This document shows, piece by piece, positions 2,176 through 63,517 of a stretch of 64,000 bases of DNA. A program made the translations under genes and the position numbers. Location of the stretch: sequence record LR756500.1; one strand, written 5' to 3'. The notes beneath the pieces were generated by a model. The model was not told where the DNA came from. It ran no database searches and worked only from the letters and a program-made list of their open reading frames with translations. The first letter of the stretch is position 1; each line of letters starts with the position of its first letter.

Positions 2176-2703
2176 TTACTTTAATAGTTCATAAATTTCT
2201 GAAATTCTGCTATTAGTTTCTTTTTTTATTTTAATTATAATTTCAGGATATATTTTATTAAACCACTCATTATCAATAAGTGTATTATTCTTTAATACAC
2301 TTTGTATTACATCTAAACTTATTCCATTAAATGTATTAATTGGAATATGATTAAAATGATAAAATTTTATATTAATACTATCATTTCCAACTAAATGTAT
2401 AGAAACATTATAGTTTATCATTGCATTTGTTTGATCTCGATATATTTTTGTAAGTGATTTACTTTGTATAGTACTATCACTAACATATTTAAAAAACGTA
2501 CTATATTCAATAATATTAGATTGTTTATTTACATTTTTAATAATATAATTAGTTTTACCACTTAAATTATCTGTCAAATATTTAAAATTAGTTTTAGCTT
2601 TTTGATTATTAATAATTTTAAATGTTGTATCTATTTTTAAATCTTGTGAATAACTAACTGCTACAACTAAAAATAAGGATAAAATTAATAAGATTTTTTT
2701 CAT
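2176..2703 (-). CDS. Exported protein with signal peptide
   Basis: MKKILLILSLFLVVAVSYS|Q: basic N-terminus, hydrophobic core and Gln at +1, as in many Bacteroidota secreted proteins. Confidence 0.65.
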   Translation of the reverse strand: MKKILLILSLFLVVAVSYSQDLKIDTTFKIINNQKAKTNFKYLTDNLSGKTNYIIKNVNKQSNIIEYSTFFKYVSDSTIQSKSLTKIYRDQTNAMINYNVSIHLVGNDSINIKFYHFNHIPINTFNGISLDVIQSVLKNNTLIDNEWFNKIYPEIIIKIKKETNSRISEIYELLK

Positions 2704-3689
2704 ATAGGATTTTTTGACAATTTATACTCTTTAGGAAATTCTTTTTTTATTATTTCTCTGTATTCATTAATTATATTATTTGCTATATTTAATTTTTTTT
2801 CAGGTGGATCTTTTTTATAAAAATCTTTATACATTGCTTTATAAGTTGAAGCCTGAGAGCATGCTCCTAAACCTGGTGATAAATTTGATTCTATTAAAAA
2901 TACTTTACCGTTTTTATCGATAAAAAAATCTAATGCATAAAAGTCCGGAGCAAAATGCTTTCTAGTATCTTTTATTATAGTATTAAATTCATTTAAAAAC
3001 TTTAATTTATTTAAATCTTGTTCTATATAAATAAAACTAACTTTTTCTTTTTTATCTTTAGTTTTAATAGTACTATTATCTTCTTGATTTGGAACTCTTT
3101 CATATATTATAAATGCATTATCTTTTAAACATAATGCTCTATATTCTGCTGCAAAATCTATCATTTCACTATATACATCAAAAGTGCCTTTAGAGTTTAT
3201 TAAATCTTGATATGATTCAAATTTTTCTATTCCTATTCCACTATGTCCTGATTCAGGTTTAGCTATTATAGGAAAATTTAAATCTTTAGTATCTCTTCTA
3301 GAATAAACAGTTTTAGGTAAATATGATTTATCTCCTAAAGTTTTATGCCATATTTTTTTACTACCACTAATTTTTGCTAATTCTGGATCATAATTATATG
3401 TATGTTGTTTTACTATATCTAAATGCTTATTTATAAACTCAGAACTAAAACCTGTATCTGAATGAGCATATCTAAACACTGGTCTATAAATATCTAAATC
3501 TTTATGTTCTGTTTGATTATGATATACTTTTTTATTCACAATAAAAATATCATATAATTCATGTTCAGAAGTATTTGCTAATTCTTTTATTCTTTCATTA
3601 TCAGTTGATGAATTTTGATTAAAAATTTTTACCCATTGAATTCTATCATCATTAATTTTAAATTCTTCGTAAGGCTTAATAAATTTCAT
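2700..3689 (-). CDS. ATP-grasp (RimK-like) ligase with N-terminal capsid-targeting-like tag
   Basis: IIAKPESGHSGIGI, EYRALC and DFYALDFFIDKNGKVFLIESNLSPG match ATP-grasp motifs (KP..G..G.G; D; E.N..PG). N-terminus is MKFIKPYEEF. Confidence 0.8.
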   Translation of the reverse strand: MKFIKPYEEFKINDDRIQWVKIFNQNSSTDNERIKELANTSEHELYDIFIVNKKVYHNQTEHKDLDIYRPVFRYAHSDTGFSSEFINKHLDIVKQHTYNYDPELAKISGSKKIWHKTLGDKSYLPKTVYSRRDTKDLNFPIIAKPESGHSGIGIEKFESYQDLINSKGTFDVYSEMIDFAAEYRALCLKDNAFIIYERVPNQEDNSTIKTKDKKEKVSFIYIEQDLNKLKFLNEFNTIIKDTRKHFAPDFYALDFFIDKNGKVFLIESNLSPGLGACSQASTYKAMYKDFYKKDPPEKKLNIANNIINEYREIIKKEFPKEYKLSKNPI

Positions 3690-3850
3690 TAAAAGTATTT
3701 GTTTTAATATATATTTGAATATTTTTATAAAAATAAATTTAATTTCATCAAATACTTTTTCTTTCTAAATAATCATTTCTCATTACAGCTATCATATCAA
3801 CAACATCTATAGCTCTAAATATTTCCCATGTTATCATATTATGACTTAAT

Positions 3851-4279
3851 TTACCATATTATAGTTTTCATAAAATTATATGATAGTATCCAATTTTTCA
3901 TATCTTCTAATGTACAGTGTTCTCTAGATGGCCCATAAGGTATCATTCCACAATTAAATACCCAATAACCATTATCTGAATCCCATCTAAAATATGCATG
4001 ATCATCCTTTACTTTTTCAGTATAAATCTGTAATATTTCTAATTGTAATTTTAAAGCATTTTCTTTAGATTCAACAGGTATATTTGGATAAAATGTTTGT
4101 TTTGAAATATCGATATTTCTTAAAACTAAACCTTTATCAACATTAAAATTAATATCTTCTTTATAAGAACTCATTAATTTATGCATAGATATTTTTGCTT
4201 CTTCTTTTGTTATATTACCAATAGGTATTACGAATTTCCTTCTTATTTGATTATAGCCTGTTATATTATAATTAATCAT
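3851..4279 (-). CDS. Hypothetical protein containing a portal-(gp20)-like segment
   Basis: The track ORF 3851..4420 overlaps the nrdJ 3' end, so the likelier start is ATG 4279 (MINYNITGY). RRKFVIPIGNITKEEAKISMHKLMSSYKE resembles the T4-type portal motif RRIFYIDVGN...KAEQYL...M..Y. Confidence 0.5.
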   Translation of the reverse strand: MINYNITGYNQIRRKFVIPIGNITKEEAKISMHKLMSSYKEDINFNVDKGLVLRNIDISKQTFYPNIPVESKENALKLQLEILQIYTEKVKDDHAYFRWDSDNGYWVFNCGMIPYGPSREHCTLEDMKNWILSYNFMKTIIW

Positions 4280-4298
4280 ATTTATATTATATTTAAAT

Positions 4299-6589: not shown

Positions 6590-6621
6590 TATTTAATTTT
6601 ATTTTATATATTAATGGAGCA
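6582..6621 (-). promoter_or_regulatory. RNA hairpin sequestering the endonuclease start codon, with a candidate late promoter in its loop
   Basis: 10-bp perfect stem, plus-strand tgctccatta (6582-6591) / taatggagca (6612-6621). One arm contains the ATG at 6589. AATATATAA reads on the minus strand at 6604-6612. Confidence 0.65.
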
Positions 6622-6625
6622 ACTG

Positions 6626-8470: not shown

Positions 8471-8484
8471 TATTATTTATTTTT

Positions 8485-11843: not shown

Positions 11844-11862
11844 AAAATTTAAGATTTAAATA

Positions 11863-12710: not shown

Positions 12711-12715
12711 TTAAA

Positions 12716-13180
12716 TTAACCTTCAAGATTTTGTGAAGCATTAATATCTCCAATATAAGCTTCTACATCATCATCTGTCAATTCAGCTTGTTTACCGTTT
12801 TCTAATTGTACTAAATATTTTCCTGTATCTTCACTCCATGAAATAATATCGCCTACTAATCCATCAGCTTTACATTTAACTTTAGATCCAGGTATTAAAT
12901 GACTTTCACCAACCAATTTTTGAGTTTTAGCTCCTAATCTATTATTATCATCATTAACTATAACTTCAATTTCAGTTTCATTAAATTGTTGTTGTCCACT
13001 ATCATCTAAACTAACATTATATTTTTTAATATCTTCACTCCAAGAGTTTAAATATCCTAATTGACCACTAGCTTTTACTTTTATTCTAGTACCTGGTGTT
13101 ATAACATCGGCTTCTTTAACCAAATGCTGATTAGTTTTAACGTCGTTTACAAACTCTTCAAATAATTTTACGTATTCCAT
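12716..13180 (-). CDS. Protein with two tandem SH3/KOW-like beta repeats and capsid-targeting-like tag
   Basis: ITPGTRIKVKASGQLGYLNSWSED..KYNVSLD is repeated as LIPGSKVKCKADGLVGDIISWSED..KYLVQLE. N-terminus is MEYVKLFEEFVND. Confidence 0.65.
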   Translation of the reverse strand: MEYVKLFEEFVNDVKTNQHLVKEADVITPGTRIKVKASGQLGYLNSWSEDIKKYNVSLDDSGQQQFNETEIEVIVNDDNNRLGAKTQKLVGESHLIPGSKVKCKADGLVGDIISWSEDTGKYLVQLENGKQAELTDDDVEAYIGDINASQNLEG

Positions 13181-13200: not shown

Positions 13201-13584
13201 TTATTTGTATTCTGTTTTAAATTCATTAAACGTTTTAATGAATTTTAATTTCTTTTTTTTATTTAATAGTATATCACCTGATCCTAGTATTTGTTTTGAA
13301 AAATTAGTTGACAAATCAGGATCACCAGGCAATTTAACTGAACCTATTCCATTAACATTAATTGGAGTACTTGCTACTGGGGCAGTGCTTGTAATAGAAG
13401 TATTTTCATTAGCTTTTTTCATTTCTTCATCAGTAGTATGCGCATAATCTTTTATTTCTTTTATAGTCATTCCATTTGCAGCATCAATTACTTCTTTACT
13501 AACTTCTGATTCTTTCTTTTTACCTTCTTTATATGCTAAAACTATATTAAAAAAAGCTCTCTGTTTTACACTAGTTGATGGCAT
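13201..13584 (-). CDS. DUF3008-like protein
   Basis: MPSTSVKQRAFF...A.KEG.....SKEV...A.GM...EIKDYAHT pattern; a tag-like LKFIKTFNEF sits at the C-terminus. Confidence 0.6.
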   Translation of the reverse strand: MPSTSVKQRAFFNIVLAYKEGKKKESEVSKEVIDAANGMTIKEIKDYAHTTDEEMKKANENTSITSTAPVASTPINVNGIGSVKLPGDPDLSTNFSKQILGSGDILLNKKKKLKFIKTFNEFKTEYK

Positions 13585-13592: not shown

Positions 13593-13877
13593 TTATTTTG
13601 TCATATCTATTCCTAATAAATCTTTAGCTAATTTTAATGCATCAGGTTCATCTACTATTCCACTCTTAACTAATTCAGAATAGTATTTAGGATTTTCTGT
13701 TAAATGATCGATTGCAACTTCTTTTGCTGTTGATTTATCACTAGAGTGTTCAGCTTCTACTGCAATTCCAACTTCTAATTCATTTTTATCGATAGTTGAT
13801 TCATCAGTATCATCACCTTTACCTCCAATTAAAACTTGTTCATTAATAAATTCTAAATAAGTTTTTACAAATTCCAT
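13593..13877 (-). CDS. DUF5661-like protein with capsid-targeting-like tag
   Basis: ELEVGIAVEAEH...AKEVAIDHLTENPKYYSEL motif. N-terminus is MEFVKTYLEFINE. Confidence 0.7.
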   Translation of the reverse strand: MEFVKTYLEFINEQVLIGGKGDDTDESTIDKNELEVGIAVEAEHSSDKSTAKEVAIDHLTENPKYYSELVKSGIVDEPDALKLAKDLLGIDMTK

Positions 13878-13887
13878 ATTATTGTTT

Positions 13888-15849
13888 TTATTTATATATT
13901 TCTTTTTTTAATTCATCATAAAATGAATGTAATACTGTTGGAACCATAACTTTAAATACTTCATAATTATCATCTTTAATTGCAGTTCTAACAACCGATG
14001 CACTAATATCTTCATCTGCTCTTTTAATTTCAAATAACTCAAAATCATTTAGCATATTTAATTCATCTTTATATTTATCTATTTGTATTTTGAATGTTTT
14101 TAATCTATCTGTACCTACTCCCCATTTTAGAGGTTCATATTCAGGACGTAATGAATTAAATATTTTATCTACTGATGCTGAATCAATAATAAATACATTT
14201 TCTAGAAACTCATAATTTAATTTTAGTGCATCAAACATTCTTAATTGTAATTCTTTATCGAAAGGATTTAAATCTTTATCTTGTGAAGTCTCTTTACCTT
14301 TAACTATAAAAATTATAACAGGGAGTTTATTTGTCATATGTAATTTATTTAAAACTTTTATATGACCTAATGTAAAAGGTTGAAATCTTCCTACAAATAT
14401 ATTTACTTGTTGTTTTCCATGTTCTTTATCTTTAATATTTAATGCTTCGAATGTTGAATCTTCTAATTTTTCTATATTACTTTCTAATTTATTTAATTCT
14501 TTTTTTAAAAAATCAATAGTTGGAATATTTATAGGATTACTTTCTATTGTTATAGTTATACTATTTTCAGAAACGTCTTCCTCTTCTTCATATATATTAT
14601 CATTCATTTCTTTCATAATAATATAATCACCAAAAGTTTTAAATGAATCATCAGATTCAGCTTCTGTTGCATCTTTTATTTTTCCTATTATAATATTAAT
14701 TTCTTTAATAATAGGTTCTGTTAATACATTGGTAGTCTTTTTTCTCTTTTTTCTTAATGATGATAAAAATATTTTAAATAAATCTTTTAATTTATCTGAT
14801 GAATTTAAATATTCTTTTGTCTTTTGATTTTTAATTAATTCAATATTTAAATCAAATTCTTTCTTTTTTGCAAAACTTGGAGTTTCAAAATCTATATCTT
14901 TGTATTTATCTATATTTTTATTAACATACTTATTAAATATATCACAAATAATTTCAATATATCTTTCATCAGGTTTAATAGATAAAATGCCAACAGATAA
15001 AACGGATTTATTTCTTTCTATAAATTCAATTATATCTAATAATATTATTGAATAAATATCTTTAATAGTTCTAGTATCTTGTACTTTATTTTTCTCTTGT
15101 ATATTTTTTATAATTGGATCTATTATTTTTCCAATATATGTTTTATCATTGTGCTCATCAAAAAATTTAAATACAATTGAATCTATAGGTTTAATTAAAT
15201 CATTATTTAATGTAGTTTTTTTAAGAGATGGATTTAAAATACTTATAATATATTTAGTAAATGAATCTGTTCCAAATATATCACCTAAAGAATCTTTATC
15301 AGTTTTTATAAAATCTTTTATTTGATTTTTTTGCTTATCATTTAATACACCTTCAAAAATAATAGGAGGACCTTGTACTTCTAGTTTATTAGCCCATTCA
15401 TTTAAAATTTTAGAATTATCTATAACTTTAATTGTTTTATTTTGATTATTTTTTACCAATATATGTGTTAATACTAAATTATTAGTAGGTAAATTATCAT
15501 AAACAATATTTACTGGACTTTTATTTACAAAATATTGAAAACTAAATCTCCAATTATCTGGTATTTCTTTTAAAACAGATTTATCAATTTTATTAACAAA
15601 ATGATTTCTAACAGATTCATAATATATCATTAATGTTCTATCTATAATACTTAATGGAATTCTATCATCCCTTTTAAATATATCTATTGGGTCATTAACG
15701 ATATTTTTTCTATCAGCATCTATTTTTTGAACATATACTGTAGATCCATCTAAATTTTCACTTATAATCGTATATTTTTCGAGTAATTCTTCAATAAACT
15801 TATTACCCTGTTCTTTATAAATATCTTTTATTTCTTGTATTCCTGCCAT
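13888..15849 (-). CDS. Two-domain protein: degenerate ligase-like N-domain plus C-terminal HIGH-family nucleotidyltransferase (cytidylyltransferase-like)
   Basis: N-terminal ISENLDG (KxDG motif with K replaced by N). C-terminal FVGRFQPFTLGH, VGTDR and ISASVVR. Confidence 0.7.
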   Translation of the reverse strand: MAGIQEIKDIYKEQGNKFIEELLEKYTIISENLDGSTVYVQKIDADRKNIVNDPIDIFKRDDRIPLSIIDRTLMIYYESVRNHFVNKIDKSVLKEIPDNWRFSFQYFVNKSPVNIVYDNLPTNNLVLTHILVKNNQNKTIKVIDNSKILNEWANKLEVQGPPIIFEGVLNDKQKNQIKDFIKTDKDSLGDIFGTDSFTKYIISILNPSLKKTTLNNDLIKPIDSIVFKFFDEHNDKTYIGKIIDPIIKNIQEKNKVQDTRTIKDIYSIILLDIIEFIERNKSVLSVGILSIKPDERYIEIICDIFNKYVNKNIDKYKDIDFETPSFAKKKEFDLNIELIKNQKTKEYLNSSDKLKDLFKIFLSSLRKKRKKTTNVLTEPIIKEINIIIGKIKDATEAESDDSFKTFGDYIIMKEMNDNIYEEEEDVSENSITITIESNPINIPTIDFLKKELNKLESNIEKLEDSTFEALNIKDKEHGKQQVNIFVGRFQPFTLGHIKVLNKLHMTNKLPVIIFIVKGKETSQDKDLNPFDKELQLRMFDALKLNYEFLENVFIIDSASVDKIFNSLRPEYEPLKWGVGTDRLKTFKIQIDKYKDELNMLNDFELFEIKRADEDISASVVRTAIKDDNYEVFKVMVPTVLHSFYDELKKEIYK

Positions 15850-15880
15850 CAGTATTAAAATTTAATGATTATATTATATA

Positions 15881-17146
15881 TCAAAAACGAAGCAAACCCA
15901 TAATTTGGTTTACAGGAGAAAAGGATCCCGTTAATTTATATCTCTTTGAATTATAAACAAATACAATTCCTTCAGAAGGCATTATTGAATCAAATCCACC
16001 TAAAGCTTCTATTTTATTTAAGTTTAATTGTAATACATCTAATAATCCTTTTCCACCAGTATTTTCTATTTCTTTAATCTTTTTATCTAAATTATCTTTA
16101 ATAACTTTCACTGTATCATTAGAATTAACGGATAAAAATCCACTTATATTTTTTAAAACAGTAACACCTAATTCTGTAAAAATACTCTCAAATTTATCTC
16201 TTATATTTTGTCTAATATTTTTAATTGAATCAGATTTTTCTAGCATTTTAATAAATCCTAAATTATTTAGTTCTAATTCTTTTATTGATATAATAGTTCC
16301 ATTTTTAAAAGCTAAACGTTTAGCTGCTCGTTCAAACACATCTCCGTCAAAATCAGTTTCATGTTTAGCAATACTATTTAAAATAATTTTTTTCCAAAAT
16401 TCTATATGCCATTCTTCTAATGTAGAATTATCATTCATATCCATTGAATCTCTAATATCATCAATTTTTTTATGAAAATAATTTTGTTTAACAGAAAAAT
16501 CGTTATGCTTAGAAATATTTAAATAATTTGGTTCATGAACTTTAAATATGCTATTAATACTTTTATTTACTAAATTTATTACATCAACAATATTTTTAGA
16601 TATTTTATTATTTTCATCAATTGGATTTCCATCAAAATCATAACTTATAAATCCATGCATAATTATTTTAGGTGAATCATATACAATAACATTTGGAGAA
16701 CTTGGATATATTATTTCAATATTCATAAACTTTTTACCTGTTTCAAATTCAACATCTAATATTGATTGATCTATTTTAGAAAATATTTTATTTAATTCGG
16801 TTATAGCTAATGAAAATGCTTTAGATAATTCTCCTCTATTTTCAAATTTTTGTATTAATTGATCTACTGTTAAAGCATCTTTACCATAATTTTTTAAATG
16901 ACCTTTATTTCTTGCTGTAAATAATTGTCCATGTTTCCATGTTATTGATAAAGCATATCCATCCAATTTTTCAGATATTAATTCTTCTTTATCTAAATAT
17001 CCTCCAAGTGCTCTATCAACTATCGTTTTTAAATCTTTAAATGTTAAACTATAATCTTCAAAAGGATGATTTAAATGTCCGTAACTTCCACCTTCTAAAA
17101 TTAAATTTTCATTTAAAAATTCTTCATAAGATTTTAAAAATTTCAT
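15881..17146 (-). CDS. DUF6267-like ATP-dependent ligase/nucleotidyltransferase-fold protein with capsid-targeting-like tag
   Basis: GHLNHPFED, ISEKLDG (ligase motif I) and C-terminal EGIVFVYNSKRYKLTGSF (ligase motifs IV/V). N-terminus is MKFLKSYEEFLNE. Confidence 0.7.
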   Translation of the reverse strand: MKFLKSYEEFLNENLILEGGSYGHLNHPFEDYSLTFKDLKTIVDRALGGYLDKEELISEKLDGYALSITWKHGQLFTARNKGHLKNYGKDALTVDQLIQKFENRGELSKAFSLAITELNKIFSKIDQSILDVEFETGKKFMNIEIIYPSSPNVIVYDSPKIIMHGFISYDFDGNPIDENNKISKNIVDVINLVNKSINSIFKVHEPNYLNISKHNDFSVKQNYFHKKIDDIRDSMDMNDNSTLEEWHIEFWKKIILNSIAKHETDFDGDVFERAAKRLAFKNGTIISIKELELNNLGFIKMLEKSDSIKNIRQNIRDKFESIFTELGVTVLKNISGFLSVNSNDTVKVIKDNLDKKIKEIENTGGKGLLDVLQLNLNKIEALGGFDSIMPSEGIVFVYNSKRYKLTGSFSPVNQIMGLLRF

Positions 17147-18590: not shown

Positions 18591-19190
18591 TTATATATCA
18601 CCCGTTCGTATCAAATATTCCTTAATTATCTCTAATGTAGTTATTGATGGTCTCCAATATAATTTTATTTTACTTTCAATATTATCTAATAATGTATCAT
18701 AATATTCATTTTTATTATGTATTCTATTAGGAGCTGATGATATCCAATATTCTATATCATCAAAATTAAATGTTGATTGTGCACCATATAATATATGAAA
18801 TTTATTTTCTAATTCTGTATAAGCTTTATTAAATTTAATATCTTTTAATCTATTATTTAGTCTAATTAATTCGTCATATAATATTTCTAATGTTTTATCG
18901 ACATCATGTTGTGTATTATTATCTGCAATTGTGTGATACCTCAAAAAATTTCCTATTTTATCCCTATTTATATCAAATGGTATTTTCCAATCCGTATGAA
19001 TATTAAATCCAATTTTTTTACTTACTTCTTTGGGAGCATAATTTTGTTTTAAATCTATAGGAAACTTTCTTCCATTAACCAGCCATTTAAATGTTCCATC
19101 TTGTGATTTATTCACAATATCTTTAACAAAAGATTCATCACTAATATTTGATTTATTTAAAAATTTTTCATATTCTAATATAAATTTCAT
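18591..19190 (-). CDS. Hypothetical protein with capsid-targeting-like tag
   Basis: N-terminus is MKFILEYEKFLN; the remainder is unrecognised. Confidence 0.6.
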   Translation of the reverse strand: MKFILEYEKFLNKSNISDESFVKDIVNKSQDGTFKWLVNGRKFPIDLKQNYAPKEVSKKIGFNIHTDWKIPFDINRDKIGNFLRYHTIADNNTQHDVDKTLEILYDELIRLNNRLKDIKFNKAYTELENKFHILYGAQSTFNFDDIEYWISSAPNRIHNKNEYYDTLLDNIESKIKLYWRPSITTLEIIKEYLIRTGDI

Positions 19191-19215
19191 TATAAATACT
19201 TATTTGATTTATATA

Positions 19216-30789: not shown

Positions 30790-31167
30790 TTATTTGGCTT
30801 TTTTACTACTACCACTTCCTATAGCAGCACCTATAGCTGTACCAACTAATCTGCTAGTTAAAAGGTCAAAAAATACTCCTTTTTCAATTCCTAATATTTT
30901 AGCAATTAGTTTTCCAACTGATTTACCTAATGCAAATCCAACTAAACCCCCAAATATTGCTCCTAAAAATCCTTCATTAATTTCATCAAAATTAATTTCC
31001 TCTAATTTTTTTCCTTCAAATTGTTTGACATACAAATTAATTGCTTCATCAATTTTATTTTCTAACTCTTCTGTTAGCACTATATCTTCATTAATATTTT
31101 CATTAACGAATGAATTAAATGTTTTAAATTCATTATCATTATTTTTATATTCTATAAAAGTTTCCAT
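30790..31167 (-). CDS. Small protein with Gly-zipper hydrophobic helices
   Basis: EINEGFLGAIFGGLVGFALGKSVG...LVGTAIGAAIG, preceded by tag-like FKTFNSFVNE. Confidence 0.65.
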   Translation of the reverse strand: METFIEYKNNDNEFKTFNSFVNENINEDIVLTEELENKIDEAINLYVKQFEGKKLEEINFDEINEGFLGAIFGGLVGFALGKSVGKLIAKILGIEKGVFFDLLTSRLVGTAIGAAIGSGSSKKAK

Positions 31168-31197
31168 TATTAAATTCTATTTATGTTATATATTTTT

Positions 31198-48931: not shown

Positions 48932-50032
48932 TTATTTTGATTCTTCTTTCCATGCATCTATTGCAGCCTGCATTGTTTCATAATCTTCTTTATGTTCTTT
49001 ATAAAATTTCTCGGCTTCAGCTGCATCATTTAAAGATAATTTATATGTTCTACTTATAATTAAATGATTAACGCATTTATTCAAAAATACTTTATAATTG
49101 TCACTTTCTCTTAATGCAAGTGCAGCATCACCTATTAAACTATTATATCTATCCCATACTTCTTTTACTTCTCTTTCTTTAATATTACTATCTAATAGTT
49201 TTAAATCATCTTCCATATCAACAAAACTAAATGCTTCTATTGCAGTAAATCCATATTTTTGTTGTAGGTCAATCCATCGTTGACTATGTTTATAAGGATC
49301 TGAACCTATTTGAGATTTTCTTTCAGATGATCTTTCTCTATGTAATGAATTATAAACATTTTGTAAAACACTACTAACTTCGCCTGGTTTATCTTTCATT
49401 AATTCATCAAGTTTTAATAATATAGGACTTATGTTTTTTTCATATCTATTATAATCTTCTGGATTACCTGAAGTTCTACCTCTTGTAGCATCATTAACAT
49501 CCTTATAATCTTTTTTAATTTGTCCATCTGCCATTTTATCAAAATTTCCATATGCAAATTTTTCATCATCAGTTGCAGTATCGGTCTTTAATGCATTAGC
49601 ATCTTTAATTCCTTTTAATTGTTCTCCCCTAAAAACTTTTCTTAAATATACATTAGTGCCTGCTATTTGCTGCGCATCCTTTTCCATTTCGTTTGCTGTA
49701 TCTAAAATTGGATCATTTTTCTTTTTAATTATTTGATCTAATTTAGATATATCAAAATATTCATTAGCTAAAATCATTTCTCTAACTTTACGTCTAGCTG
49801 CATCAGTATTTTGAGCTGCTTCTAATCTTAGTGCATTTACTTTCTTCATTATTTTTCTAATCTTAGGAGCAGTAAACATCCAATTTCCTATTTTACTAAA
49901 AATACCTTCTTCAATTAATTCCATTAAAATTTCATAATCTTCAATAGATTCAATTAAATAATTTTCATTATTTTTAATTTCAATTTTTTTAGAAAAATTT
50001 TCATATTTATTAATATATTTCATTTCTTTCAT
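48932..50032 (-). CDS. Helical hypothetical protein with capsid-targeting-like tag
   Basis: MKEMKYINKYENF, then LIE/IEEG sites typical of processed head proteins. Confidence 0.55.
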   Translation of the reverse strand: MKEMKYINKYENFSKKIEIKNNENYLIESIEDYEILMELIEEGIFSKIGNWMFTAPKIRKIMKKVNALRLEAAQNTDAARRKVREMILANEYFDISKLDQIIKKKNDPILDTANEMEKDAQQIAGTNVYLRKVFRGEQLKGIKDANALKTDTATDDEKFAYGNFDKMADGQIKKDYKDVNDATRGRTSGNPEDYNRYEKNISPILLKLDELMKDKPGEVSSVLQNVYNSLHRERSSERKSQIGSDPYKHSQRWIDLQQKYGFTAIEAFSFVDMEDDLKLLDSNIKEREVKEVWDRYNSLIGDAALALRESDNYKVFLNKCVNHLIISRTYKLSLNDAAEAEKFYKEHKEDYETMQAAIDAWKEESK

Positions 50033-54036: not shown

Positions 54037-54050
54037 AGTTTATATTTTAT

Positions 54051-57047: not shown

Positions 57048-57289
57048 TAGTTAATCTTTTTATAGTTATATGGAACTGTGTAATTAAAAAATGTTCGTAT
57101 ATATTTAACATTTTCAATATGATGAACCATTATATCATTAATATATTTTAGAAATCCATCCATATTAATATTTTTGAAAAGATAATTAGAACTAGTTTTT
57201 CTTATTAATACATCTTTATAATCAAAGCCTAAATTTTTTAAACTTTCATTACGATAATATGTTAAATTATATAAACTTACTTTTGCCAT
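57047..57289 (-). CDS. Small baseplate-associated protein
   Basis: 80-aa ORF coupled between the gp6-like and gp7-like genes. Confidence 0.55.
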   Translation of the reverse strand: MAKVSLYNLTYYRNESLKNLGFDYKDVLIRKTSSNYLFKNINMDGFLKYINDIMVHHIENVKYIRTFFNYTVPYNYKKIN

Positions 57290-59088
57290 TATTTTAATTT
57301 CTTTCTATTATTTTCAGTTATTCTATTATATAAATCGTATTTAACTTCACCTTTAAAAATAATATTTAAAGAAGATAGTTTAGTAGGTTCAGGATATATT
57401 TCATAAAATTTATTATTTCTATCTCTCCATCCACCTCTTATAATTGGAACTTCTTTCTCTTTAATAACTATATCACCAAATTCATCTAATCCTAAATTTG
57501 GATTTTCATTTTGTTTAAGTGTTATTTTTTTATTTGTTAATAGTTTTTTTGTATTAGTTTTAGTATCATATCCTTCAACTGGAACATAATAATATCCTCT
57601 TATTAATGCTAATTCGTTTTCTTTAGAAACAAATGTAACATTTACAGAATCAATACCATCAATATTTTCTATTAAAGCTATTATATCAGATCTAGGTATT
57701 TTGTCTCTTCTTCTAACCGTTAAAAAATATTCACTTAATTTAGTTCTAATTTCAGATCTTAAATTACTTTCTGATTTATTTTCAAAATGAGTAATAATAA
57801 TATTAATTGCATAATATTTAATTATTGGATCAACTAATCTTAATTCTGAACTAATTAATTGTTGTTGACTTTCTTCGATTATATTGAATATATGTTCTTT
57901 TTCTAAAGGAGTTAATGTAAATTCAGATTGATCTAAAGTAAAATAATCAACATCAGTTGTTACTTTTCTAGATATATCAGGTAATAAAAATAAATAAACA
58001 ATATTATCATCATTTAAATATTGATCATCAAATGTTGAATATGCATCAATAACAGAAAAGAAATTATATCTTCTTAAAAAATAAATATAATTATCAGGTC
58101 TTGCTAATACAAAAGATTTACTAGCTTTAGGAGCTATCAATCTTGTAAAATCTAAAGGTTCAGAATCTGATCCAAATGAAGGTGGCATTAATATGCTTGT
58201 CATTAATACTTCATTTAAATCTATTTCATTTCCATATTTATCAAATCCAGAATCTTCATATTTTAAAATTACTTCATTACTATTTCCAATATTTCCGCTT
58301 CTTCCATTTATCTTAATATACTGTATTTCAATAATAGATCCTTCAGCTGGAATGGTTCCAAAATTTTCAGATCCAAAATATACGTCTAAACCTCCACTAA
58401 TACCAGTTTTAACAATTACTCCTTCATCACCTCGCATCATATCATAAAGGCTTTCATATTTTTCCCATTTCTTTCCATTTATAAATACTTCGACTTGAAA
58501 ATGATCTGTCATATCTTTAGTAGTTAAAGAATGACTTTCCATTGATCTTCCCTGTGATACAAATTGTTGTGATTCAATAGTTCCCTGATATATTTGAGCA
58601 TGATGAAATGACGTATCTCCTTTTTCTAAAATAATATTATCCTTATCTAAAAATAAAAAATAAGGTAAATTATTAGTTAAACACATTATCTTTGTATACT
58701 TTGGAATTATTATATAATCACCGACTATTTCTTTATCTATCCCGCTCTTTAATTTTAATGCAACCTTTCCAAATGCAGAAATACCTCTAGTAGGATTATG
58801 ACCAGTTAATCGACTTAATCCATAAATAGATTCTCGATTTCTTGCAGTCATGAAATTTAATTCAGTTAATGCATTCTCAATATAATAAAATATTAATTCA
58901 CTTATCTCAGATAATACATGAAGTATTTGAGAAAATGGACTAGCAGGTGTTAAAATATTTTTACTCTGTTCATATTTCTCAACTAAATATTTAAAAGCTT
59001 GTCCAAATATTTGAGCTGATAATAAACGTTCCTTACTTAAAAATTTAAAATTCATTCTATTGAANNNNNNNNNNNNNNNNNNNNNCAA
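57289..59088 (-). CDS. Baseplate wedge protein, T4 gp6-like
   Basis: TAR..ESIYGL.RL.G.NP.R..SA, V.FG....G.IP..G..I...Y....G..GN and GSDSEPL....L.AP. The start is obscured by an N-run. Confidence 0.75.
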   Translation of the reverse strand: MXXXXXXXFNRMNFKFLSKERLLSAQIFGQAFKYLVEKYEQSKNILTPASPFSQILHVLSEISELIFYYIENALTELNFMTARNRESIYGLSRLTGHNPTRGISAFGKVALKLKSGIDKEIVGDYIIIPKYTKIMCLTNNLPYFLFLDKDNIILEKGDTSFHHAQIYQGTIESQQFVSQGRSMESHSLTTKDMTDHFQVEVFINGKKWEKYESLYDMMRGDEGVIVKTGISGGLDVYFGSENFGTIPAEGSIIEIQYIKINGRSGNIGNSNEVILKYEDSGFDKYGNEIDLNEVLMTSILMPPSFGSDSEPLDFTRLIAPKASKSFVLARPDNYIYFLRRYNFFSVIDAYSTFDDQYLNDDNIVYLFLLPDISRKVTTDVDYFTLDQSEFTLTPLEKEHIFNIIEESQQQLISSELRLVDPIIKYYAINIIITHFENKSESNLRSEIRTKLSEYFLTVRRRDKIPRSDIIALIENIDGIDSVNVTFVSKENELALIRGYYYVPVEGYDTKTNTKKLLTNKKITLKQNENPNLGLDEFGDIVIKEKEVPIIRGGWRDRNNKFYEIYPEPTKLSSLNIIFKGEVKYDLYNRITENNRKKLK

Positions 59089-59120
59089 AACGAAAAAGTC
59101 TCTAAGAAATTATAAACTTT

Positions 59121-59480: not shown

Positions 59481-59485
59481 ATCTT

Positions 59486-59872: not shown

Positions 59873-60171
59873 TTTTTATTCATTTTATTTACAATAAATG
59901 CTACTAAAGTAATAATAGGTTTAACTATCCAAGCATATCCTATAAATACTAATGCTATAATAGATAATATTAATGCTCCTAAATTAAATATAGTTCCAAC
60001 TATATTATCTATAGTTGTTCCTTCTGTTGTAAAATTTAATATAATTGATGTTATAATAACTAATGAAGCTCCAAACAATATTTGTGTAATAGTATTAAAT
60101 AATAAACTCTGAAAAAACTTACAAAATATATTTGTACATTTTTTCTCTTTAAATGATTTTAAAAAATTCAT
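59869..60171 (-). CDS. Small membrane protein (2 predicted TM helices; holin candidate)
   Basis: Two long hydrophobic stretches and basic termini. Confidence 0.5.
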   Translation of the reverse strand: MNFLKSFKEKKCTNIFCKFFQSLLFNTITQILFGASLVIITSIILNFTTEGTTIDNIVGTIFNLGALILSIIALVFIGYAWIVKPIITLVAFIVNKMNKK

Positions 60172-60578
60172 ATATTTTTATTTTTTTCTATTTCTAAACT
60201 TACTAATTTTTTATACTCATAATAATCTGAATTTTTAACTGTTTGAGTACAACATCTAAGACAATCTAAATCTAAATAATAAACTAATATCATAGGATTA
60301 CTATTAGTTATACTTGGAATTAATTGAAAGCATAAAGGATCTTTAATAGCATCTTTATTTTCATTAAAAGGATGATTATAATTTTTAAAAACTTTATTAA
60401 ATATTTCAAGAGTATATATTTCATCAATAGTATTTGATGAAAATAATAATTCTATATCTTTACATATATTTGTACAACTATCATTAATATATCCAAAATT
60501 TTTAAAATAAGTATAAATTTTTTTAGATATAAATAAATCTGCGTATATTCTACTTCTAGTTTTTTCTTTGTAATTCAT
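60168..60578 (-). CDS. Hypothetical protein
   Basis: 136-aa ORF coupled to its neighbours. Confidence 0.55.
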   Translation of the reverse strand: MNYKEKTRSRIYADLFISKKIYTYFKNFGYINDSCTNICKDIELLFSSNTIDEIYTLEIFNKVFKNYNHPFNENKDAIKDPLCFQLIPSITNSNPMILVYYLDLDCLRCCTQTVKNSDYYEYKKLVSLEIEKNKNI

Positions 60579-60579
60579 A

Positions 60580-60903
60580 TTAAATTTTTATAAAGTGATT
60601 ATTGTATTTAGTTAATTCCGTTATATTTTTTTCTACCTTTCTACAAATTAATCCAAATTCTTCTAAGTCATTTTGATTAAGTTTAAAAAATTCTCCTTTA
60701 ATTTGTTTATTTGAATAATTTCTTTTTAAATAAGCTTCAATTTTTGTAGCAAATTTTGTATTGTATTCTAATATTACTTTCCATTCTCCAGGATTACCGG
60801 TTGTCATTCCTTTAATTCTATCTTCCATATTTTGACCAGTCCAACCTATTTTATATTGAACTTCTTCTCCTATTATATTTTCTATTAAATAAACTTTTTT
60901 CAT
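60580..60903 (-). CDS. GIY-YIG nuclease, T5orf172-like
   Basis: VYLI...YKIGWT...RI..M.TGNP...E..L...Y....KGEFF.L. Confidence 0.8.
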   Translation of the reverse strand: MKKVYLIENIIGEEVQYKIGWTGQNMEDRIKGMTTGNPGEWKVILEYNTKFATKIEAYLKRNYSNKQIKGEFFKLNQNDLEEFGLICRKVEKNITELTKYNNHFIKI

Positions 60904-61304
60904 CTACTAGGTATTGCTAAATCTCCATAATATAAAACTTCTTTTTCATTTGGTATTTCTATAAATCCATTCTTTTTATAAAAATTAAATTGTTTCTTAG
61001 AATCTGCTCCATATCCACCAGGAGTAACATATATTGATTTTGGATCATATTTTTTTATTATTTCTTTTATAGCTATTTGTAAAATTTTAGATCCTACTCC
61101 TTTTCCTTTTCCTAATACATCTGGAATATTTACTCTATTAATATACCATTCACAGTTATTAATATTTGAAATTTCACATACTCCTAAACTAAAATTTTCT
61201 TTATAATATACATTGACATATTCCTTTGTTGAAACAATAGTTATATTGTTAGATTCACTTAATGTTTCGCTTTTAAATAATTTATATTCTTTTATGTATT
61301 TCAT
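60900..61304 (-). CDS. GNAT-family acetyltransferase with capsid-targeting-like tag
   Basis: I..VNIP..LGKGKGVGSKIL (acetyl-CoA motif A) and FYKKNGF. N-terminus is MKYIKEYKLF. Confidence 0.75.
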   Translation of the reverse strand: MKYIKEYKLFKSETLSESNNITIVSTKEYVNVYYKENFSLGVCEISNINNCEWYINRVNIPDVLGKGKGVGSKILQIAIKEIIKKYDPKSIYVTPGGYGADSKKQFNFYKKNGFIEIPNEKEVLYYGDLAIPSR

Positions 61305-61321
61305 TTTTCATGTTTTATTTT

Positions 61322-61852
61322 CTATAAAAATCCAAAATCATCAGCATTATACAAATGCTCGTATTTATTTTTTATTTTACTACTAACACTTAACTTTCTT
61401 ATAAATTCATACTTTAAATATAAATTGGGATCTTCACTCAACCAATTATCAACTATACTATCTATATCATTTCCAATTATATCTAATTGCTCTATCTTTA
61501 AAAATTCTTTTGGTAATTTTTTAAGATTATTATTATTTAAACTTAATATTCTTAATTTTTTTAACTGACTTATCTTTTTAGATATCAACGTTAATTTATT
61601 ATTATTTAAATCTAATACGACTAAATTTTTAAGTTTTAATATGTCATCAGGTACTGATGACAATTGATTATCAAATAAATAAAGTTGTATTAAATTTTTA
61701 AATTTATATACTCTATCTGGAATAGTTGTTATTTGATGTCCGTTTAAATATATTACATCATCATTTATATTTTTTTCAGCTATAATACTCATAGCTATAT
61801 CAGGTCCTTTATTTTCTAATAAAAATTCTTCATATTCTAAAATGTATTTCAT
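61322..61852 (-). CDS. Leucine-rich-repeat protein with capsid-targeting-like tag
   Basis: LYLFDNQLSSVP / LDLNNNKLTLIS / LSLNNNNLKKLP fit LxLxxNxL. N-terminus is MKYILEYEEFLLE. Confidence 0.85.
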   Translation of the reverse strand: MKYILEYEEFLLENKGPDIAMSIIAEKNINDDVIYLNGHQITTIPDRVYKFKNLIQLYLFDNQLSSVPDDILKLKNLVVLDLNNNKLTLISKKISQLKKLRILSLNNNNLKKLPKEFLKIEQLDIIGNDIDSIVDNWLSEDPNLYLKYEFIRKLSVSSKIKNKYEHLYNADDFGFL

Positions 61853-62460
61853 TTTCCACGTCTTATATTAGTTAATATTCTCAAATCATTTGCACTATGT
61901 TGTGTATAATTTAAATTAAATTTCTTAGAAAATATTTTAAAATCAAAAGGATCAGAATCTCCGCCACTATGAATTATTGTATACTTTAAAATTAATTCTG
62001 CCAAGTCTTTAGATGTACTAGCGTCAATTATTTTTCTTTCTAAATATAATCTTATTTGATTATCCATTAATACACTATCTAAAGCTACTAATAATTGTTG
62101 CCTACTTCTTTCAGGCCCTATATCATCAAATCTTTGAAGCAATCTCATACTAGTTACTTTTTCTTTGAAAGGTCTTATTTGTTTTGTATAATATAACAAA
62201 GTAACTTCTAATTTATTTTCATCTTTGTTTCCTTCTTTTTCTTTTGCTTTTCTTAAAACTTCATCAAATTCTTTTTGCGATGCAGTTCCTTTAACAGTAT
62301 TAGGAGTTCTAAATGAGTTACTTGATTTTGATTTATTTTTATCATTAGAAGTGTTTTTAAACTTATTCGCATATTCGGGTGGAATATAACGTCCACTATA
62401 TCTTATTTTTTCATCATCTGCTTCTAATAAAAATTCTTCGTATTCTAAAATGTATTTCAT
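61849..62460 (-). CDS. Hypothetical protein with capsid-targeting-like tag
   Basis: N-terminal 13 aa are identical to those of the LRR protein. Confidence 0.65.
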   Translation of the reverse strand: MKYILEYEEFLLEADDEKIRYSGRYIPPEYANKFKNTSNDKNKSKSSNSFRTPNTVKGTASQKEFDEVLRKAKEKEGNKDENKLEVTLLYYTKQIRPFKEKVTSMRLLQRFDDIGPERSRQQLLVALDSVLMDNQIRLYLERKIIDASTSKDLAELILKYTIIHSGGDSDPFDFKIFSKKFNLNYTQHSANDLRILTNIRRGK

Positions 62461-62468
62461 ATGCTTAC

Positions 62469-62511
62469 TCTATTTTAATTATATATTTTGAATATATAAT
62501 TAAAAATAGAA
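62469..62511. promoter_or_regulatory. Near-palindromic divergent promoter region
   Basis: tctattttaattatatatt-ttg-aatatataattaaaaataga gives AATATATAA on both strands, upstream of the two divergent tagged genes. Confidence 0.55.
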
Positions 62512-62515
62512 GGTT

Positions 62516-63517
62516 ATGAAGTTTATATTAGAGTATGAAGAATTTTTGTTTGAGAATACTAGATATGTAGATGCTGAAAAAGACTTTTTAAAAACTAAAA
62601 GAATAGATAAAAAGACTTGGGATTATTTAATAACAAATATAAGTAATAAATATGTTTATTGGGCTGTAAGAGAGTATGTTTTAAATAAAGAAAATAATAG
62701 AATTGGTAATAAATTAGAAGATTATGTTAATATATCACGAATGTATGATATCAAAGGAAATACATTTGCTAAAAATGAAAGAGATTTATATAATTTTTCA
62801 GATTTTAATAAAAATAACGATTATACATTTAATAAAGTAAAAGATTTATATAATATTAATAACAGTTTAAAAATCAAACCAAAAGATATATTTAAAACTA
62901 GAACAGATTTAGTTGAAATAGGAAGTAATATTTTATATGAAGATAAAGAAGGTAATATTGTAGTTGAAGCATTAAATAGAGCTGCTGATTTATATTGGGG
63001 AAGTTGGTATAAAAAAAGAGAAGGTGCATTAGTTATAGATAACTGTATGACAAGTGAACCTTCATCTGATATAAAATATTTAAAAGATGTTCCAGAGGGT
63101 GGTAGACTTTATATTATATTACCTAAAGAACCGATAATTATATTAAGAAGATTATTTATAATGGAATATGAAGATGCATGGGGATTCGTAGGTCATCAAG
63201 ATTTTTCGATTGAAGAAACTAGTTATAAAAATATGTTAATTAAAAAATATCATGCTTTATATAAAGAATTAAATAAAAAATTAAATTATAAAAATGAAGA
63301 ATTATATAATATAATTAAAAGACTTTTTGAGTTAGATAGTAAACATGTAATCTATGATTACATTTATAATGGTTATAATGAATTAGATATTAATATAGAA
63401 TTTAATGAATTTATTAAACAATTAAACAATAATTTTAATCATATACCATCATATATGTCAGAGTATTTTATAGAATTATATAATTATTATCATGGATTAA
63501 CTAATAAAATAGTTTAA
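62516..63517 (+). CDS. Hypothetical protein with capsid-targeting-like tag; the only convincing plus-strand gene
   Basis: 333-aa ORF starting MKFILEYEEFLFE; no competing minus-strand ORF covers it. Confidence 0.75.
   Translation: MKFILEYEEFLFENTRYVDAEKDFLKTKRIDKKTWDYLITNISNKYVYWAVREYVLNKENNRIGNKLEDYVNISRMYDIKGNTFAKNERDLYNFSDFNKNNDYTFNKVKDLYNINNSLKIKPKDIFKTRTDLVEIGSNILYEDKEGNIVVEALNRAADLYWGSWYKKREGALVIDNCMTSEPSSDIKYLKDVPEGGRLYIILPKEPIIILRRLFIMEYEDAWGFVGHQDFSIEETSYKNMLIKKYHALYKELNKKLNYKNEELYNIIKRLFELDSKHVIYDYIYNGYNELDINIEFNEFIKQLNNNFNHIPSYMSEYFIELYNYYHGLTNKIV

What the first reader, a model, noticed from the sequence alone, without database searches (positions are those of the whole stretch)
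2700..63517. A shared capsid-targeting-like N-terminal tag marks a diverse, probably injected protein payload
Seen: the consensus M(K/E)(F/Y)(I/V/L)xx(Y/F)xxF(L/I/V)xE begins at least ten unrelated ORFs: 2700 ATP-grasp, 12716 SH3-like, 13593 DUF5661-like, 15881 ligase-like, 18591, 48932, 60900 GNAT, 61322 LRR, 61849 and 62516. Established: T4 internal proteins IPII/IPIII carry the capsid-targeting sequence MKTYQEFIAE, removed by gp21 at (I/L)xE. Inference: this phage packages and ejects an enzyme and effector toolkit (peptide ligase, nucleotidyl ligase, acetyltransferase, LRR) for host takeover or anti-defence. This is the best candidate for an undescribed system here.
Basis: partly seen in the sequence, partly recalled or inferred. 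Interest (0 to 1): 0.85.

Follow-up and report, generated by a model that had tools for sequence, protein, structure and literature searches.

The report
Shared capsid-address tag on phage proteins
A huge uncultured groundwater phage starts 31 unrelated proteins with the same 13-residue peptide, which closely resembles phage T4's capsid-targeting signal, so these proteins are probably packed into the virion and injected, but no experiment shows this yet.

Summary
The peptide M-K-(Y/F)-(I/L/V)-x-x-(Y/F)-x-(E/D)-F-(L/I/V)-x-E starts 31 of about 644 ORFs in this 429 kb phage. Nine clear cases lie in the window. A six-frame scan finds it at ORF starts in 31 of 32 hits. Conservation stops after residue 13, and the protein bodies are unrelated (ATP-grasp, LRR, DUF5661, DUF6267, PNK phosphatase, DUF2201 peptidase).

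The tag also marks at least 98 unrelated families in related uncultured jumbo phages. It is nearly absent from 596 Gbp of prokaryotic genomes.

Its four best-conserved positions match the four T4 IPIII residues shown to drive capsid targeting (Y4, F7) and cleavage (I8, E10). The phage encodes a T4 gp21-type (S77) prohead protease fused to a scaffold-like tail. That tail has twice the expected number of [LIV]-x-E sites, as T4 gp22 does. Tagged genes are enriched for the promoter-like motif found before head genes. In relatives the tag heads Tad3-family proteins and a domain that other phages build into head proteins.

Best reading is a T4-type capsid-targeting propeptide on an expanded cargo set (confidence about 0.55). 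Packaging, cleavage and injection are untested. Site 48932 is weak. The SH3 and ligase labels are unsupported, and the GNAT match is below Pfam's cut-off.

The parts
2700..3689 (-). Tagged gene: ATP-grasp (R2K family 2). The tag is codons 1-13 at 3651-3689 (MKFIKPYEEFKIN). It ends in N rather than E.
12716..13180 (-). Tagged gene of 154 aa with no family assigned. Tag at 13142-13180 (MEYVKLFEEFVND).
13201..13248 (-). Decayed tag copy (LKFIKTFNEFKTEYK then stop) with no start codon. It is fused to the end of ORF 13201-13584 and sits 20 nt before the next tagged gene. It is the only non-N-terminal hit in the genome.
13593..13877 (-). Tagged gene: DUF5661, 94 aa. Tag at 13839-13877 (MEFVKTYLEFINE).
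13892..13899 (-). Promoter-like motif ATATATAA, 22 nt before the start of gene 13593-13877. The same motif stands before the major capsid and protease genes.
15881..17146 (-). Tagged gene: DUF6267 family, 421 aa. Tag at 17108-17146 (MKFLKSYEEFLNE). In several of the structural matches in the ESM Atlas the aligned region starts at query residues 16-19.
18591..19190 (-). Tagged gene of 199 aa, no family. Tag at 19152-19190 (MKFILEYEKFLNK). ATATATAA motif at 19209-19216.
48932..50032 (-). Weak or doubtful member. Only the second Met gives MKYINKYENFSKK (49985-50023). It has no (L/I/V)-x-E end and a background score. It lies among large structural-type genes.
60900..61304 (-). Tagged gene of 134 aa with weak GNAT matches below Pfam's cut-off. 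Tag at 61266-61304 (MKYIKEYKLFKSE).
61322..61852 (-). Tagged gene: leucine-rich repeats, 176 aa. Tag at 61814-61852 (MKYILEYEEFLLE). It also ends in the second shared motif NADDFGFL.
61849..62460 (-). Tagged gene of 203 aa, no family. Tag at 62422-62460 (MKYILEYEEFLLE). ATATATAA motif at 62479-62486. It heads the unit 62460 to 60900.
62516..63517 (+). Tagged gene of 333 aa, no family. Tag at 62516-62554 (MKFILEYEEFLFE). ATATATAA motif at 62492-62499. It is divergent from the previous gene.
63617..64000 (-). 3' part of a further tagged gene (338 aa in the whole genome). Its tag (MKYILEYEEFLLE) lies just beyond the window's end.
30790..31167 (-). Possible degenerate variant (METFIEYKNNDNEFKTFNSFVNEN, where residues 15-23 resemble the tag's second half). 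An ATATATAA motif sits at 31186-31193. I do not count it as a member.

Best explanation
The 13-residue N-terminal peptide is a capsid-targeting propeptide of the T4 type.

Proposed mechanism:
1. Tagged proteins are made together with head proteins.
2. The hydrophobic face of the short helix (Y3, I4, Y7, F10, L11) docks them onto the scaffolding core. That core is built by the long C-terminal extension of the S77 protease-scaffold protein.
3. The capsid shell closes around them.
4. The protease cuts after E13, at (L/I/V)-x-E followed by a small residue, and also chops the scaffold at its many (L/I/V)-x-E sites.
5. The freed proteins stay in the head and enter the next host cell with the DNA. 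They can act there before any phage gene is expressed, in host takeover or anti-defence.

Shown here: the tag, its strict N-terminal position, the unrelated cargo, the protease family, the excess of cleavage-type sites in the scaffold-like tail, and the shared promoter-like motif.

Inferred: docking, packaging, cleavage, ejection and function.
For: 1. The tag is modular and under peptide-level selection. It starts 31 ORFs here, and 31 of 32 six-frame hits lie at ORF starts. Information content is 1.3-4 bits at positions 2-13 and falls to background from position 15. Position 14 is A, S or G in 51% of the relatives' tags. Synonymous codons vary freely.

2. The bodies are unrelated. Pfam finds ATP-grasp, five LRR proteins, DUF5661, PNK3P and a DUF2201 peptidase with a VWA domain. 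The 190 tagged ORFs of relatives fall into 98 clusters once the tag is removed.

3. The tag matches T4. T4 ipII and ipIII start MKTYQEFIAE. In IPIII, residues 4 and 7 govern targeting and residues 8 and 10 govern processing (PMC9026906). Aligned from the cleavage end, these are Y7, F10, (L/I/V)11 and E13 of this tag. Y7 and F10 are its two best-conserved positions after the Met, and E13 is the best-conserved position of its last four.

4. The protease fits. An ORF of 632 aa matches Peptidase_S77 (44.8 bits against a cut-off of 27), phrog_207, and T4 gp21 structure 5JBL, with the GELxHP and SSRxxGS motifs kept. It sits between the portal and the major capsid protein.

5. The protease's C-terminal 430 aa hold 20 (L/I/V)-x-E sites against 9.5 +/- 2.6 in shuffles. 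Two relatives give 26 vs 12.8 and 24 vs 10.7. T4 scaffold gp22 gives 20 vs 10.1.

6. The tag is a clade feature. 22 of 30 carrier contigs, including every one at least 40% complete, encode the same long S77 protein. The huge phages LR756502 and LR756504 give 12 and 9 hits against 0 in the control. Only 5 hits occur in 596 Gbp of prokaryotic genomes.

7. Timing. The motif ATATATAA stands 15-35 nt before the capsid and protease genes here and before head genes of relatives. Tagged genes are enriched for it (odds ratio about 4, p = 0.006). None of the 30 genes with the other promoter-like class is tagged.

8. Cargo of relatives. Two Tad3-family proteins (79.6 and 69.3 bits) begin with the tag. 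Tad3 is a tested Thoeris inhibitor (PMC13728456). The commonest tagged family shares a domain of about 100 aa (36-59% identity) with internal parts of a protease fusion, a portal-MuF fusion and a protease-capsid fusion in cultured viruses.
Against: - There is no virion proteome, N-terminal mass spectrometry or expression data for this phage or any tag-bearing relative. The only sequencing runs that hold it are groundwater DNA.
- The cultured relatives PTm1, pT24, PAU and Slicko01 lack the tag, so nothing can be cross-checked.
- The match to T4 covers only 7-10 residues and could be convergent.
- The link with the S77 protease is confounded by common descent, and the relatives were found through the motif itself.
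- Ten of 31 tags lack E at position 13 (4 D, 3 N, and one each of K, S and C). In T4, a D at this position blocks cleavage.
- Several tagged genes sit inside the replication module.
- Mature tagged proteins are not basic like the T4 internal proteins (p = 0.16).
- They are not clearly depleted in (L/I/V)-x-E sites.
- The promoter enrichment is modest.
- The complex prediction gave no verdict.
Confidence: 0.55

Rival explanations
1. The tag is a functional docking peptide with a different destination. It could bind a phage or host hub, such as a chaperone, a protease adaptor (a degron that times protein lifetime), a replication or assembly compartment, or a modifying enzyme. On this view it is not a capsid address.
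For: The tag is a short amphipathic helix on many accessory proteins. Many tagged genes lie outside the head module, some among replication genes. Cargo such as Tad3-like and 2H-phosphoesterase proteins is normally thought to act from early expression. There is no evidence of virion presence.
Against: This does not explain the residue-by-residue match to the T4 positions for targeting and cleavage. It does not explain the sharp end of conservation at (L/I/V)-x-E plus a small residue, the link to head-gene promoter motifs, or the sharing of one tagged domain with head proteins of other viruses.
Confidence: 0.22
2. The tag does direct proteins into the prohead, but they are assembly or internal structural components such as extra scaffold or inner-body material. 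They are not injected effectors.
For: Giant phages hold many internal head proteins of unknown role (PMC5694885). The commonest tagged family of relatives has a Lys-rich coiled tail and a domain found in head-assembly fusions.
Against: The cargo includes enzymes and binding modules with no obvious structural role: ATP-grasp, PNK phosphatase, LRR and Tad3-like proteins. The repertoire varies widely between relatives, at 5-31 per genome and 98 families. That pattern is typical of arms-race genes, not of structural parts.
Confidence: 0.12
3. The shared start has no function of its own. It could be a relic of gene duplication, a recombination joint for swapping gene cassettes, or a nucleotide-level signal for translation initiation.
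For: Tagged genes form tandem arrays. Three tags in and just beyond the window's right end (ORFs 61322-61852 and 61849-62460, and the gene that runs off the window) are nearly identical in DNA. A decayed copy marks a past rearrangement.
Against: The peptide is kept across phages whose proteases are only 33-43% identical, while the protein bodies are unrelated. 32% of identical residues use different codons, and rare codons are not avoided. Key positions are nearly invariant.
Confidence: 0.08

Closest known systems
Phage T4 capsid-targeting sequence on internal proteins IPI-III (and Alt), removed by gp21
   Same: Both are short N-terminal peptides shared by otherwise unrelated proteins. Both have MK at the start, then aromatic-x-acidic-Phe-(I/L)-x-Glu. 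Both phages have a gp21-family protease and a scaffold rich in (L/I/V)-x-E sites. The genes are scattered and variable between relatives, and some cargo is anti-defence (PMC3012670).
   Different: This tag has 13 residues rather than 10, roughly one extra helical turn (Y/F-I-K-E). There are 31 tagged genes per genome rather than a handful. The cargo is mostly enzymes and repeat proteins, not small basic proteins. The protease and scaffold are one 632-aa protein. The host is probably Bacteroidota. Nothing has been tested experimentally.
Ejection and inner-body proteins of giant phages phiKZ, 201phi2-1 and SPN3US
   Same: These are jumbo phages with many internal head proteins. A related protease processes them after Glu, and the propeptides are thought to target proteins into the prohead (PMC5694885).
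   Different: Their propeptides are mostly 80-130 residues long and are not a common sequence shared by many unrelated proteins. Their cleavage motif is (S/A/G)-x-E rather than (L/I/V)-x-E.
Phage P1 DarB N-terminal packaging signal (Dar anti-restriction system)
   Same: An N-terminal signal of 30 residues or fewer is enough to load a protein, or a reporter, into the capsid for delivery with the DNA (PMC9024508).
   Different: The signal has been described for one protein rather than as a family-wide tag. It has no sequence similarity to this tag. Loading is stepwise and depends on DarA and Hdf.
Encapsulin cargo-loading peptides (from my own knowledge, not tested here)
   Same: A short terminal peptide shared by unrelated enzymes addresses them to the interior of an HK97-fold shell.
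   Different: The peptide is usually C-terminal and is not cleaved. Encapsulins hold no DNA and nothing is ejected. These are bacterial compartments, not virions.

Membership tests
T4-type capsid-targeting sequence / internal protein system | A short (10-19 aa) N-terminal peptide shared by proteins that are otherwise unrelated | tested here: met
   A 13-aa tag starts 31 ORFs. Conservation ends at residue 13-14. The bodies belong to different Pfam families, and relatives give 98 clusters.
T4-type capsid-targeting sequence / internal protein system | Residues equivalent to T4 IPIII Y4 and F7 (targeting) and I8 and E10 (processing) | tested here: met
   In the 31 tags, position 7 is Y29/F2, position 10 is F29, position 11 is L/I/V in 28, and position 13 is E21/D4. 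The T4 roles come from PMC9026906, and the T4 sequence was read from NC_000866. This is sequence correspondence only.
T4-type capsid-targeting sequence / internal protein system | The phage encodes a gp21-family (Peptidase_S77) prohead protease | tested here: met
   PF03420 scores 44.8 bits (cut-off 27). phrog_207 gives 1.4e-40. T4 gp21 structure 5JBL gives E = 2.3e-4, with the His and Ser motifs kept.
T4-type capsid-targeting sequence / internal protein system | A scaffolding core that receives the tagged proteins and is degraded at (L/I)-x-E | tested here: inconclusive
   The protease's C-terminal 430 aa have a two-fold excess of (L/I/V)-x-E, like T4 gp22. The PTm1 homologue is annotated 'prohead core scaffolding protein and protease'. 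No binding evidence exists, and the complex prediction gave no verdict.
T4-type capsid-targeting sequence / internal protein system | Tagged genes are expressed with the head genes | tested here: inconclusive
   The ATATATAA motif is shared with capsid and protease genes here and in relatives. Tagged genes are enriched for it (odds ratio about 4, p = 0.006). There are no RNA data.
T4-type capsid-targeting sequence / internal protein system | Tagged proteins are present in virions, with the tag removed after Glu | not testable with these tools
   The phage is uncultured (groundwater metagenome). The cultured relatives lack the tag.
T4-type capsid-targeting sequence / internal protein system | The proteins are ejected into the host and act there, for example against defence systems | not testable with these tools
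   There are only indirect hints. Relatives carry tagged Tad3-family and 2H-phosphoesterase proteins.
phiKZ-type giant-phage inner-body / ejection proteins | Long (about 80-130 aa) propeptides cleaved at (S/A/G)-x-E | tested here: not met
   The shared segment here is 13 aa and ends in (L/I/V)-x-E. The defining features are taken from PMC5694885.

The most novel reading that the evidence does not exclude
A readable capsid-cargo address label is shared across a whole uncultured clade of Bacteroidota-infecting jumbo and huge phages. It marks more than 100 unrelated protein families as pre-packaged, injected proteins. These include relatives of known anti-defence proteins (Tad3, 2H phosphoesterases), enzymes and LRR binders. 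If so, the injected arsenal of these phages could be read straight from sequence, and the tag could serve as a protein-delivery handle.
Probability: 0.45. Interest if true: 0.85.

Novelty: new variant of a known kind. Interest (0 to 1): 0.68.

Why it matters
Which proteins huge phages carry into the cell alongside their DNA is largely unknown, because almost none of these phages are cultured. If this tag is a capsid address, the injected proteome can be listed from sequence alone: 31 proteins here, and 5-17 by a stricter DNA pattern in four relatives.

That would give a focused candidate list for first-minute anti-defence and takeover factors. It would show that the T4 strategy is far older or more widespread than the T-even phages. 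It would also offer a short, portable tag for loading foreign proteins into large capsids.

The claim can be tested with simple reagents: a cleavage assay, tag-reporter loading, and virus-fraction proteomics.

Tried and rejected
- **Complex prediction.** I folded the protease domain (residues 1-230) with the first 40 residues of a tagged protein. The result was no verdict (score 0.00). It counts neither for nor against.
- **T4 late sigma factor gp55 against this genome.** No match. This is uninformative at this evolutionary distance.
- **Charge of the mature tagged proteins.** They are not significantly more basic than the rest of the proteome (median pI 7.9 vs 6.5, p = 0.16).
- **Depletion of (L/I/V)-x-E inside tagged proteins.** Not significant within this genome (p = 0.21). 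The relatives' set is lower, but it lacks a matched control.
- **Cultured relatives with proteomes.** Tenacibaculum phages PTm1 and pT24, Sphingomonas phage PAU and Alishewanella phage Slicko01 have the protease but no tag. Lak-A1 and two 635-735 kb phages have only 1-2 doubtful hits.
- **Second-commonest tagged family of relatives (831 aa).** No match in cultured phages.
- **PDB and Atlas searches of cargo.** DUF6267 shows only a weak fold resemblance to RNA ligase, so 'ligase-like' is rejected as a call. ORF 12716-13180 has only sub-threshold barrel-like matches, so 'SH3-like' is rejected. ORF 62516-63517 gave nothing usable.
- **Capsid protein cleavage site.** The capsid protein's N-terminus aligns with T4 gp23, and candidate (L/I)-x-E sites exist. 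The alignment is too loose to place a cleavage site.
- **Literature.** Full-text searches for the peptide and for capsid targeting in huge phages found no prior description.

Full report
**What the window is**

The window is bases 54,558-118,557 of a 429 kb virus record with 24% G+C. Part of it is identical to the uncultured huge phage LR756500.1. The only sequencing runs that hold it are groundwater metagenomes.

Nearly all genes are on the minus strand. The left third of the window is a replication and nucleotide module: RNR, DNA polymerase, helicase, primase, gp32-like SSB and thymidylate synthase. The middle holds very large structural-type genes.

**Assembly gaps**

The five stretches of N lie inside two ORFs that are not part of the finding (8485-10428 and 57289-59088). 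No tagged ORF or its upstream region is closer than 1.8 kb to a gap. The observation therefore does not depend on the gaps, and I did not read across them.

One disclosure. I did not use those letters. I leave that gene out of the promoter discussion. The odds ratios were computed over all called ORFs, so the gene remains in their untagged background.

**Checking the observation**

Nine of the ten listed ORFs begin with M-(K/E)-(Y/F)-(I/V/L)-x-x-(Y/F)-x-x-F. The tenth, 48932, fits only from its second Met. It lacks the (L/I/V)-x-E end and scores at background.

In the whole genome, 28 ORFs fit a strict pattern and three more fit loosely, out of about 644 called. Scores against a position matrix are bimodal: 28 ORFs score above 26, three score 10 to 22 (two of these are counted as tags, the third is not), and everything else scores below 0. 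A third loose tag has a GTG start and was found only in the six-frame scan.

A six-frame scan that ignored the initial Met gave 32 hits. Of these, 31 sit at an ORF start (30 ATG, 1 GTG). The last is a decayed, start-less copy at the very end of ORF 13201-13584, 20 nt before the next tagged gene. Shuffled genomes gave 1-3 hits.

Information content is high from position 1 to 13 and falls to background from position 15. The selection is on the peptide. Between tags, 32% of identical residues use different codons, and rare codons are not avoided.

**The cargo**

Behind the tag stand unrelated bodies:
- ATP-grasp of the R2K clade
- five leucine-rich-repeat proteins
- DUF5661
- a PNK-type 3' phosphatase
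- a DUF2201 metallopeptidase with a VWA domain
- a weak GNAT (below Pfam's cut-off)
- many proteins with no family

ORF 15881-17146 belongs to DUF6267. In several of its structural matches the aligned region starts at its residues 16-19, which suggests the tag lies outside the shared fold. The labels 'SH3-like' and 'ligase-like' are not supported.

**Relatives**

It found only 5 in 596 Gbp of prokaryotic genomes.

In the fetched flanks, 190 distinct tagged ORFs fall into 98 unrelated clusters once the tag is removed. They often stand in tandem arrays of up to six.

Of 30 carrier contigs, 22 encode a Peptidase_S77 domain within an open frame of 570-770 aa in 20 of them, and these 22 include every contig judged at least 40% complete. 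CheckV rates the other eight as 12-32% complete fragments.

These proteases are closest to the one in this phage (43% identity) and to those of the 630-735 kb 'Mahaphage' genomes (PMC7162821). LR756502 and LR756504 carry 12 and 9 tag hits against 0 in the control. Lak-A1 and two others carry 1-2 doubtful hits.

A stricter DNA pattern gives 22 hits in this genome and 5-17 in four relatives.

The cultured relatives PTm1, pT24, PAU and Slicko01 lack the tag. The freshwater Bacteroidota phages of PMC9723584 are probably the same clade. I did not test that.

**Comparison with T4**

T4 ipII and ipIII begin MKTYQEFIAE, as read from NC_000866. [quoted passage not shown]

Mutagenesis of IPIII showed that residues 4 and 7 matter for targeting and residues 8 and 10 for processing. 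An Asp at position 10 blocks processing but not targeting (PMC9026906).

Aligned from the cleavage end, T4's Y4-Q-E-F7-I8-A-E10 corresponds to Y7-E-E-F10-(L/I/V)11-N-E13 here. Y7 and F10 are the tag's two best-conserved positions after the Met, and E13 is the best-conserved of its last four. Position 14 is A, S or G in half of the relatives' tags, as in T4 (E followed by A).

**The protease**

The genome has a T4-like head block: gp2-like end protector, portal, protease and major capsid protein.

The protease ORF has 632 aa. Its first 200 or so residues match PF03420 (44.8 bits, cut-off 27), phrog_207 and the T4 gp21 structure 5JBL. The GELxHP and SSRxxGS motifs are kept.

Its C-terminal 430 residues contain 20 (L/I/V)-x-E triplets against 9.5 +/- 2.6 in shuffles, which puts it in the 98th percentile of the proteome. 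Two relatives give 26 vs 12.8 and 24 vs 10.7. T4 scaffold gp22, a known gp21 substrate, gives 20 vs 10.1. This fits a protease-scaffold fusion with T4-like specificity. The PTm1 homologue is annotated that way.

**Timing**

The octamer ATATATAA is nine-fold enriched upstream of genes. It lies 15-35 nt before the capsid and protease genes and before several large structural-type genes. It also lies before the protease and portal genes of two relatives. It resembles the T4 late promoter TATAAATA (my own knowledge).

Seven tagged genes carry the exact motif, and several more follow such a gene in tight arrays. Enrichment has an odds ratio of 3.9 (p = 0.006) over all genes and 4.9 (p = 0.03) for genes with their own upstream region.

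A second motif class, TTATTATATTTAC, precedes 30 genes, none of them tagged. This is suggestive only, because no RNA data exist.

**Hints on function from relatives**

Among 74 representative tagged proteins, Pfam finds Tad3, an Acb1-like 2H phosphoesterase (a ten-member family), GNAT, ATP-grasp, DUF5661 and a zeta/AAA_33 kinase.

Two Tad3-family proteins (79.6 and 69.3 bits) start MKKIKLYEEFLNE and MKTVKLFEEFLAE. Tad3 binds and blocks the Thoeris sensor ThsB (PMC13728456).

The commonest tagged family (15 members) shares a domain of about 100 aa, at 36-59% identity, with internal parts of three head proteins: the HGTV-1 protease fusion, the HRTV-28 portal-MuF fusion, and the N-terminus of a Roseobacter phage protease-capsid fusion. 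Other viruses therefore place this domain inside the head by gene fusion, which fits the tag doing the same job here.

**Verdict**

The most likely explanation is a T4-type capsid-targeting propeptide, cleaved after E13 by the S77 protease, on a greatly expanded and fast-changing cargo set. I put this at about 0.55.

The main rival is a docking peptide for some other destination (0.22). A prohead address for non-ejected components comes next (0.12). A functionless relic or a nucleotide-level signal is unlikely (0.08).

The weaknesses:
- No proteomic or expression data exist.
- The link with the protease is confounded by common descent.
- Ten of 31 tags lack E13.
- Several tagged genes sit among replication genes.
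- There is no basic-charge bias.
- There is no clear depletion of internal cleavage-type sites.
- The complex prediction gave no verdict.

I found no prior description of this tag.

**A second, unexplained feature**

Thirteen ORFs of this genome end in a second shared motif...KYEHLxNADDFGF(F/L)DN. Eleven of them are also N-tagged. The motif is absent from the relatives' loci and from IMG/VR by an exact degenerate pattern. I have no explanation for it.

Noticed in passing
window 61322-61852 (C-terminal end); elsewhere in the genome: L001:317-2013, L002:16354-17043, L005:435-5745, L006:537-1316: A second shared terminal motif, ...KYEHLxNADDFGF(F/L)DN followed by stop, ends 13 ORFs (two in weaker form). 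Eleven of them also carry the N-terminal tag, and their bodies are both LRR and non-LRR. It is absent from 1.16 Mb of relatives' loci and from IMG/VR by an exact degenerate pattern. Its function is unknown.
   Followed up: partly
window 135-644 (- strand): A 169-aa ORF is a paralogue of the first 95 or so residues of the major capsid protein (BLASTP E = 9e-6). It shares the W-x-P-I-I and Y-A-H-x-H segments. It may be a second protein that uses the capsid protein's N-terminal assembly region.
   Followed up: partly
window 13201-13248 (- strand): A decayed, start-less copy of the tag (LKFIKTFNEFKTEYK then stop) is fused to the end of ORF 13201-13584, just before tagged gene 12716-13180. It looks like a scar of cassette turnover at the tag.
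   Followed up: partly
whole genome; in the window e.g. 13892-13899, 19209-19216, 62479-62486, 62492-62499: There are two promoter-like motif classes. ATATATAA lies 15-35 nt before head and large structural-type genes, here and in relatives. TTATTATATTTAC lies before 30 genes at genome positions 160-385 kb, outside the window, and none of those genes is tagged.
   Followed up: partly
G000:C1:417568-417966 (outside the window): A short 132-aa ORF gives a weak second match to the prohead protease family (18 bits). Relatives have similar 132-aa ORFs at 31 bits. This recalls the diverged protease paralogue reported for SPN3US-like giant phages.
   Followed up: no
window 13593-17146: DUF6267, a cytidylyltransferase-bearing protein and DUF5661 are three separate genes here, and two of them are tagged. 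ESM Atlas clusters in other phages carry CTP_transf_like and DUF5661, or CTP_transf_like and DUF6267, together in one long protein whose fold matches the DUF6267 gene here (TM 0.71-0.86).
   Followed up: partly
window 24434-26152 and 8485-11843: Homing-endonuclease traffic is visible. The thymidylate synthase ORF carries an HNH endonuclease segment in its middle. A 472-aa DNA polymerase piece abuts an ORF that holds the masked gaps and whose first residues resemble the homing-endonuclease ORF next to the capsid gene. Two similar endonuclease genes flank the head block.
   Followed up: no
L181 (phage T4, NC_000866 18966-19130): T4 gene 61.1 is a 54-aa hypothetical ORF beside the primase gene. 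It starts MKTFKEFIKE, which looks like a capsid-targeting sequence. I do not know of any report that it is packaged.
   Followed up: no
L023:4944-5816:+ and relatives; L189, L190, L191: The commonest tagged family in related phages shares a domain of about 100 aa with internal segments of head-assembly fusion proteins in haloviruses and Roseobacter phages. One member also has an internal LFEEFLLE segment after that domain.
   Followed up: partly
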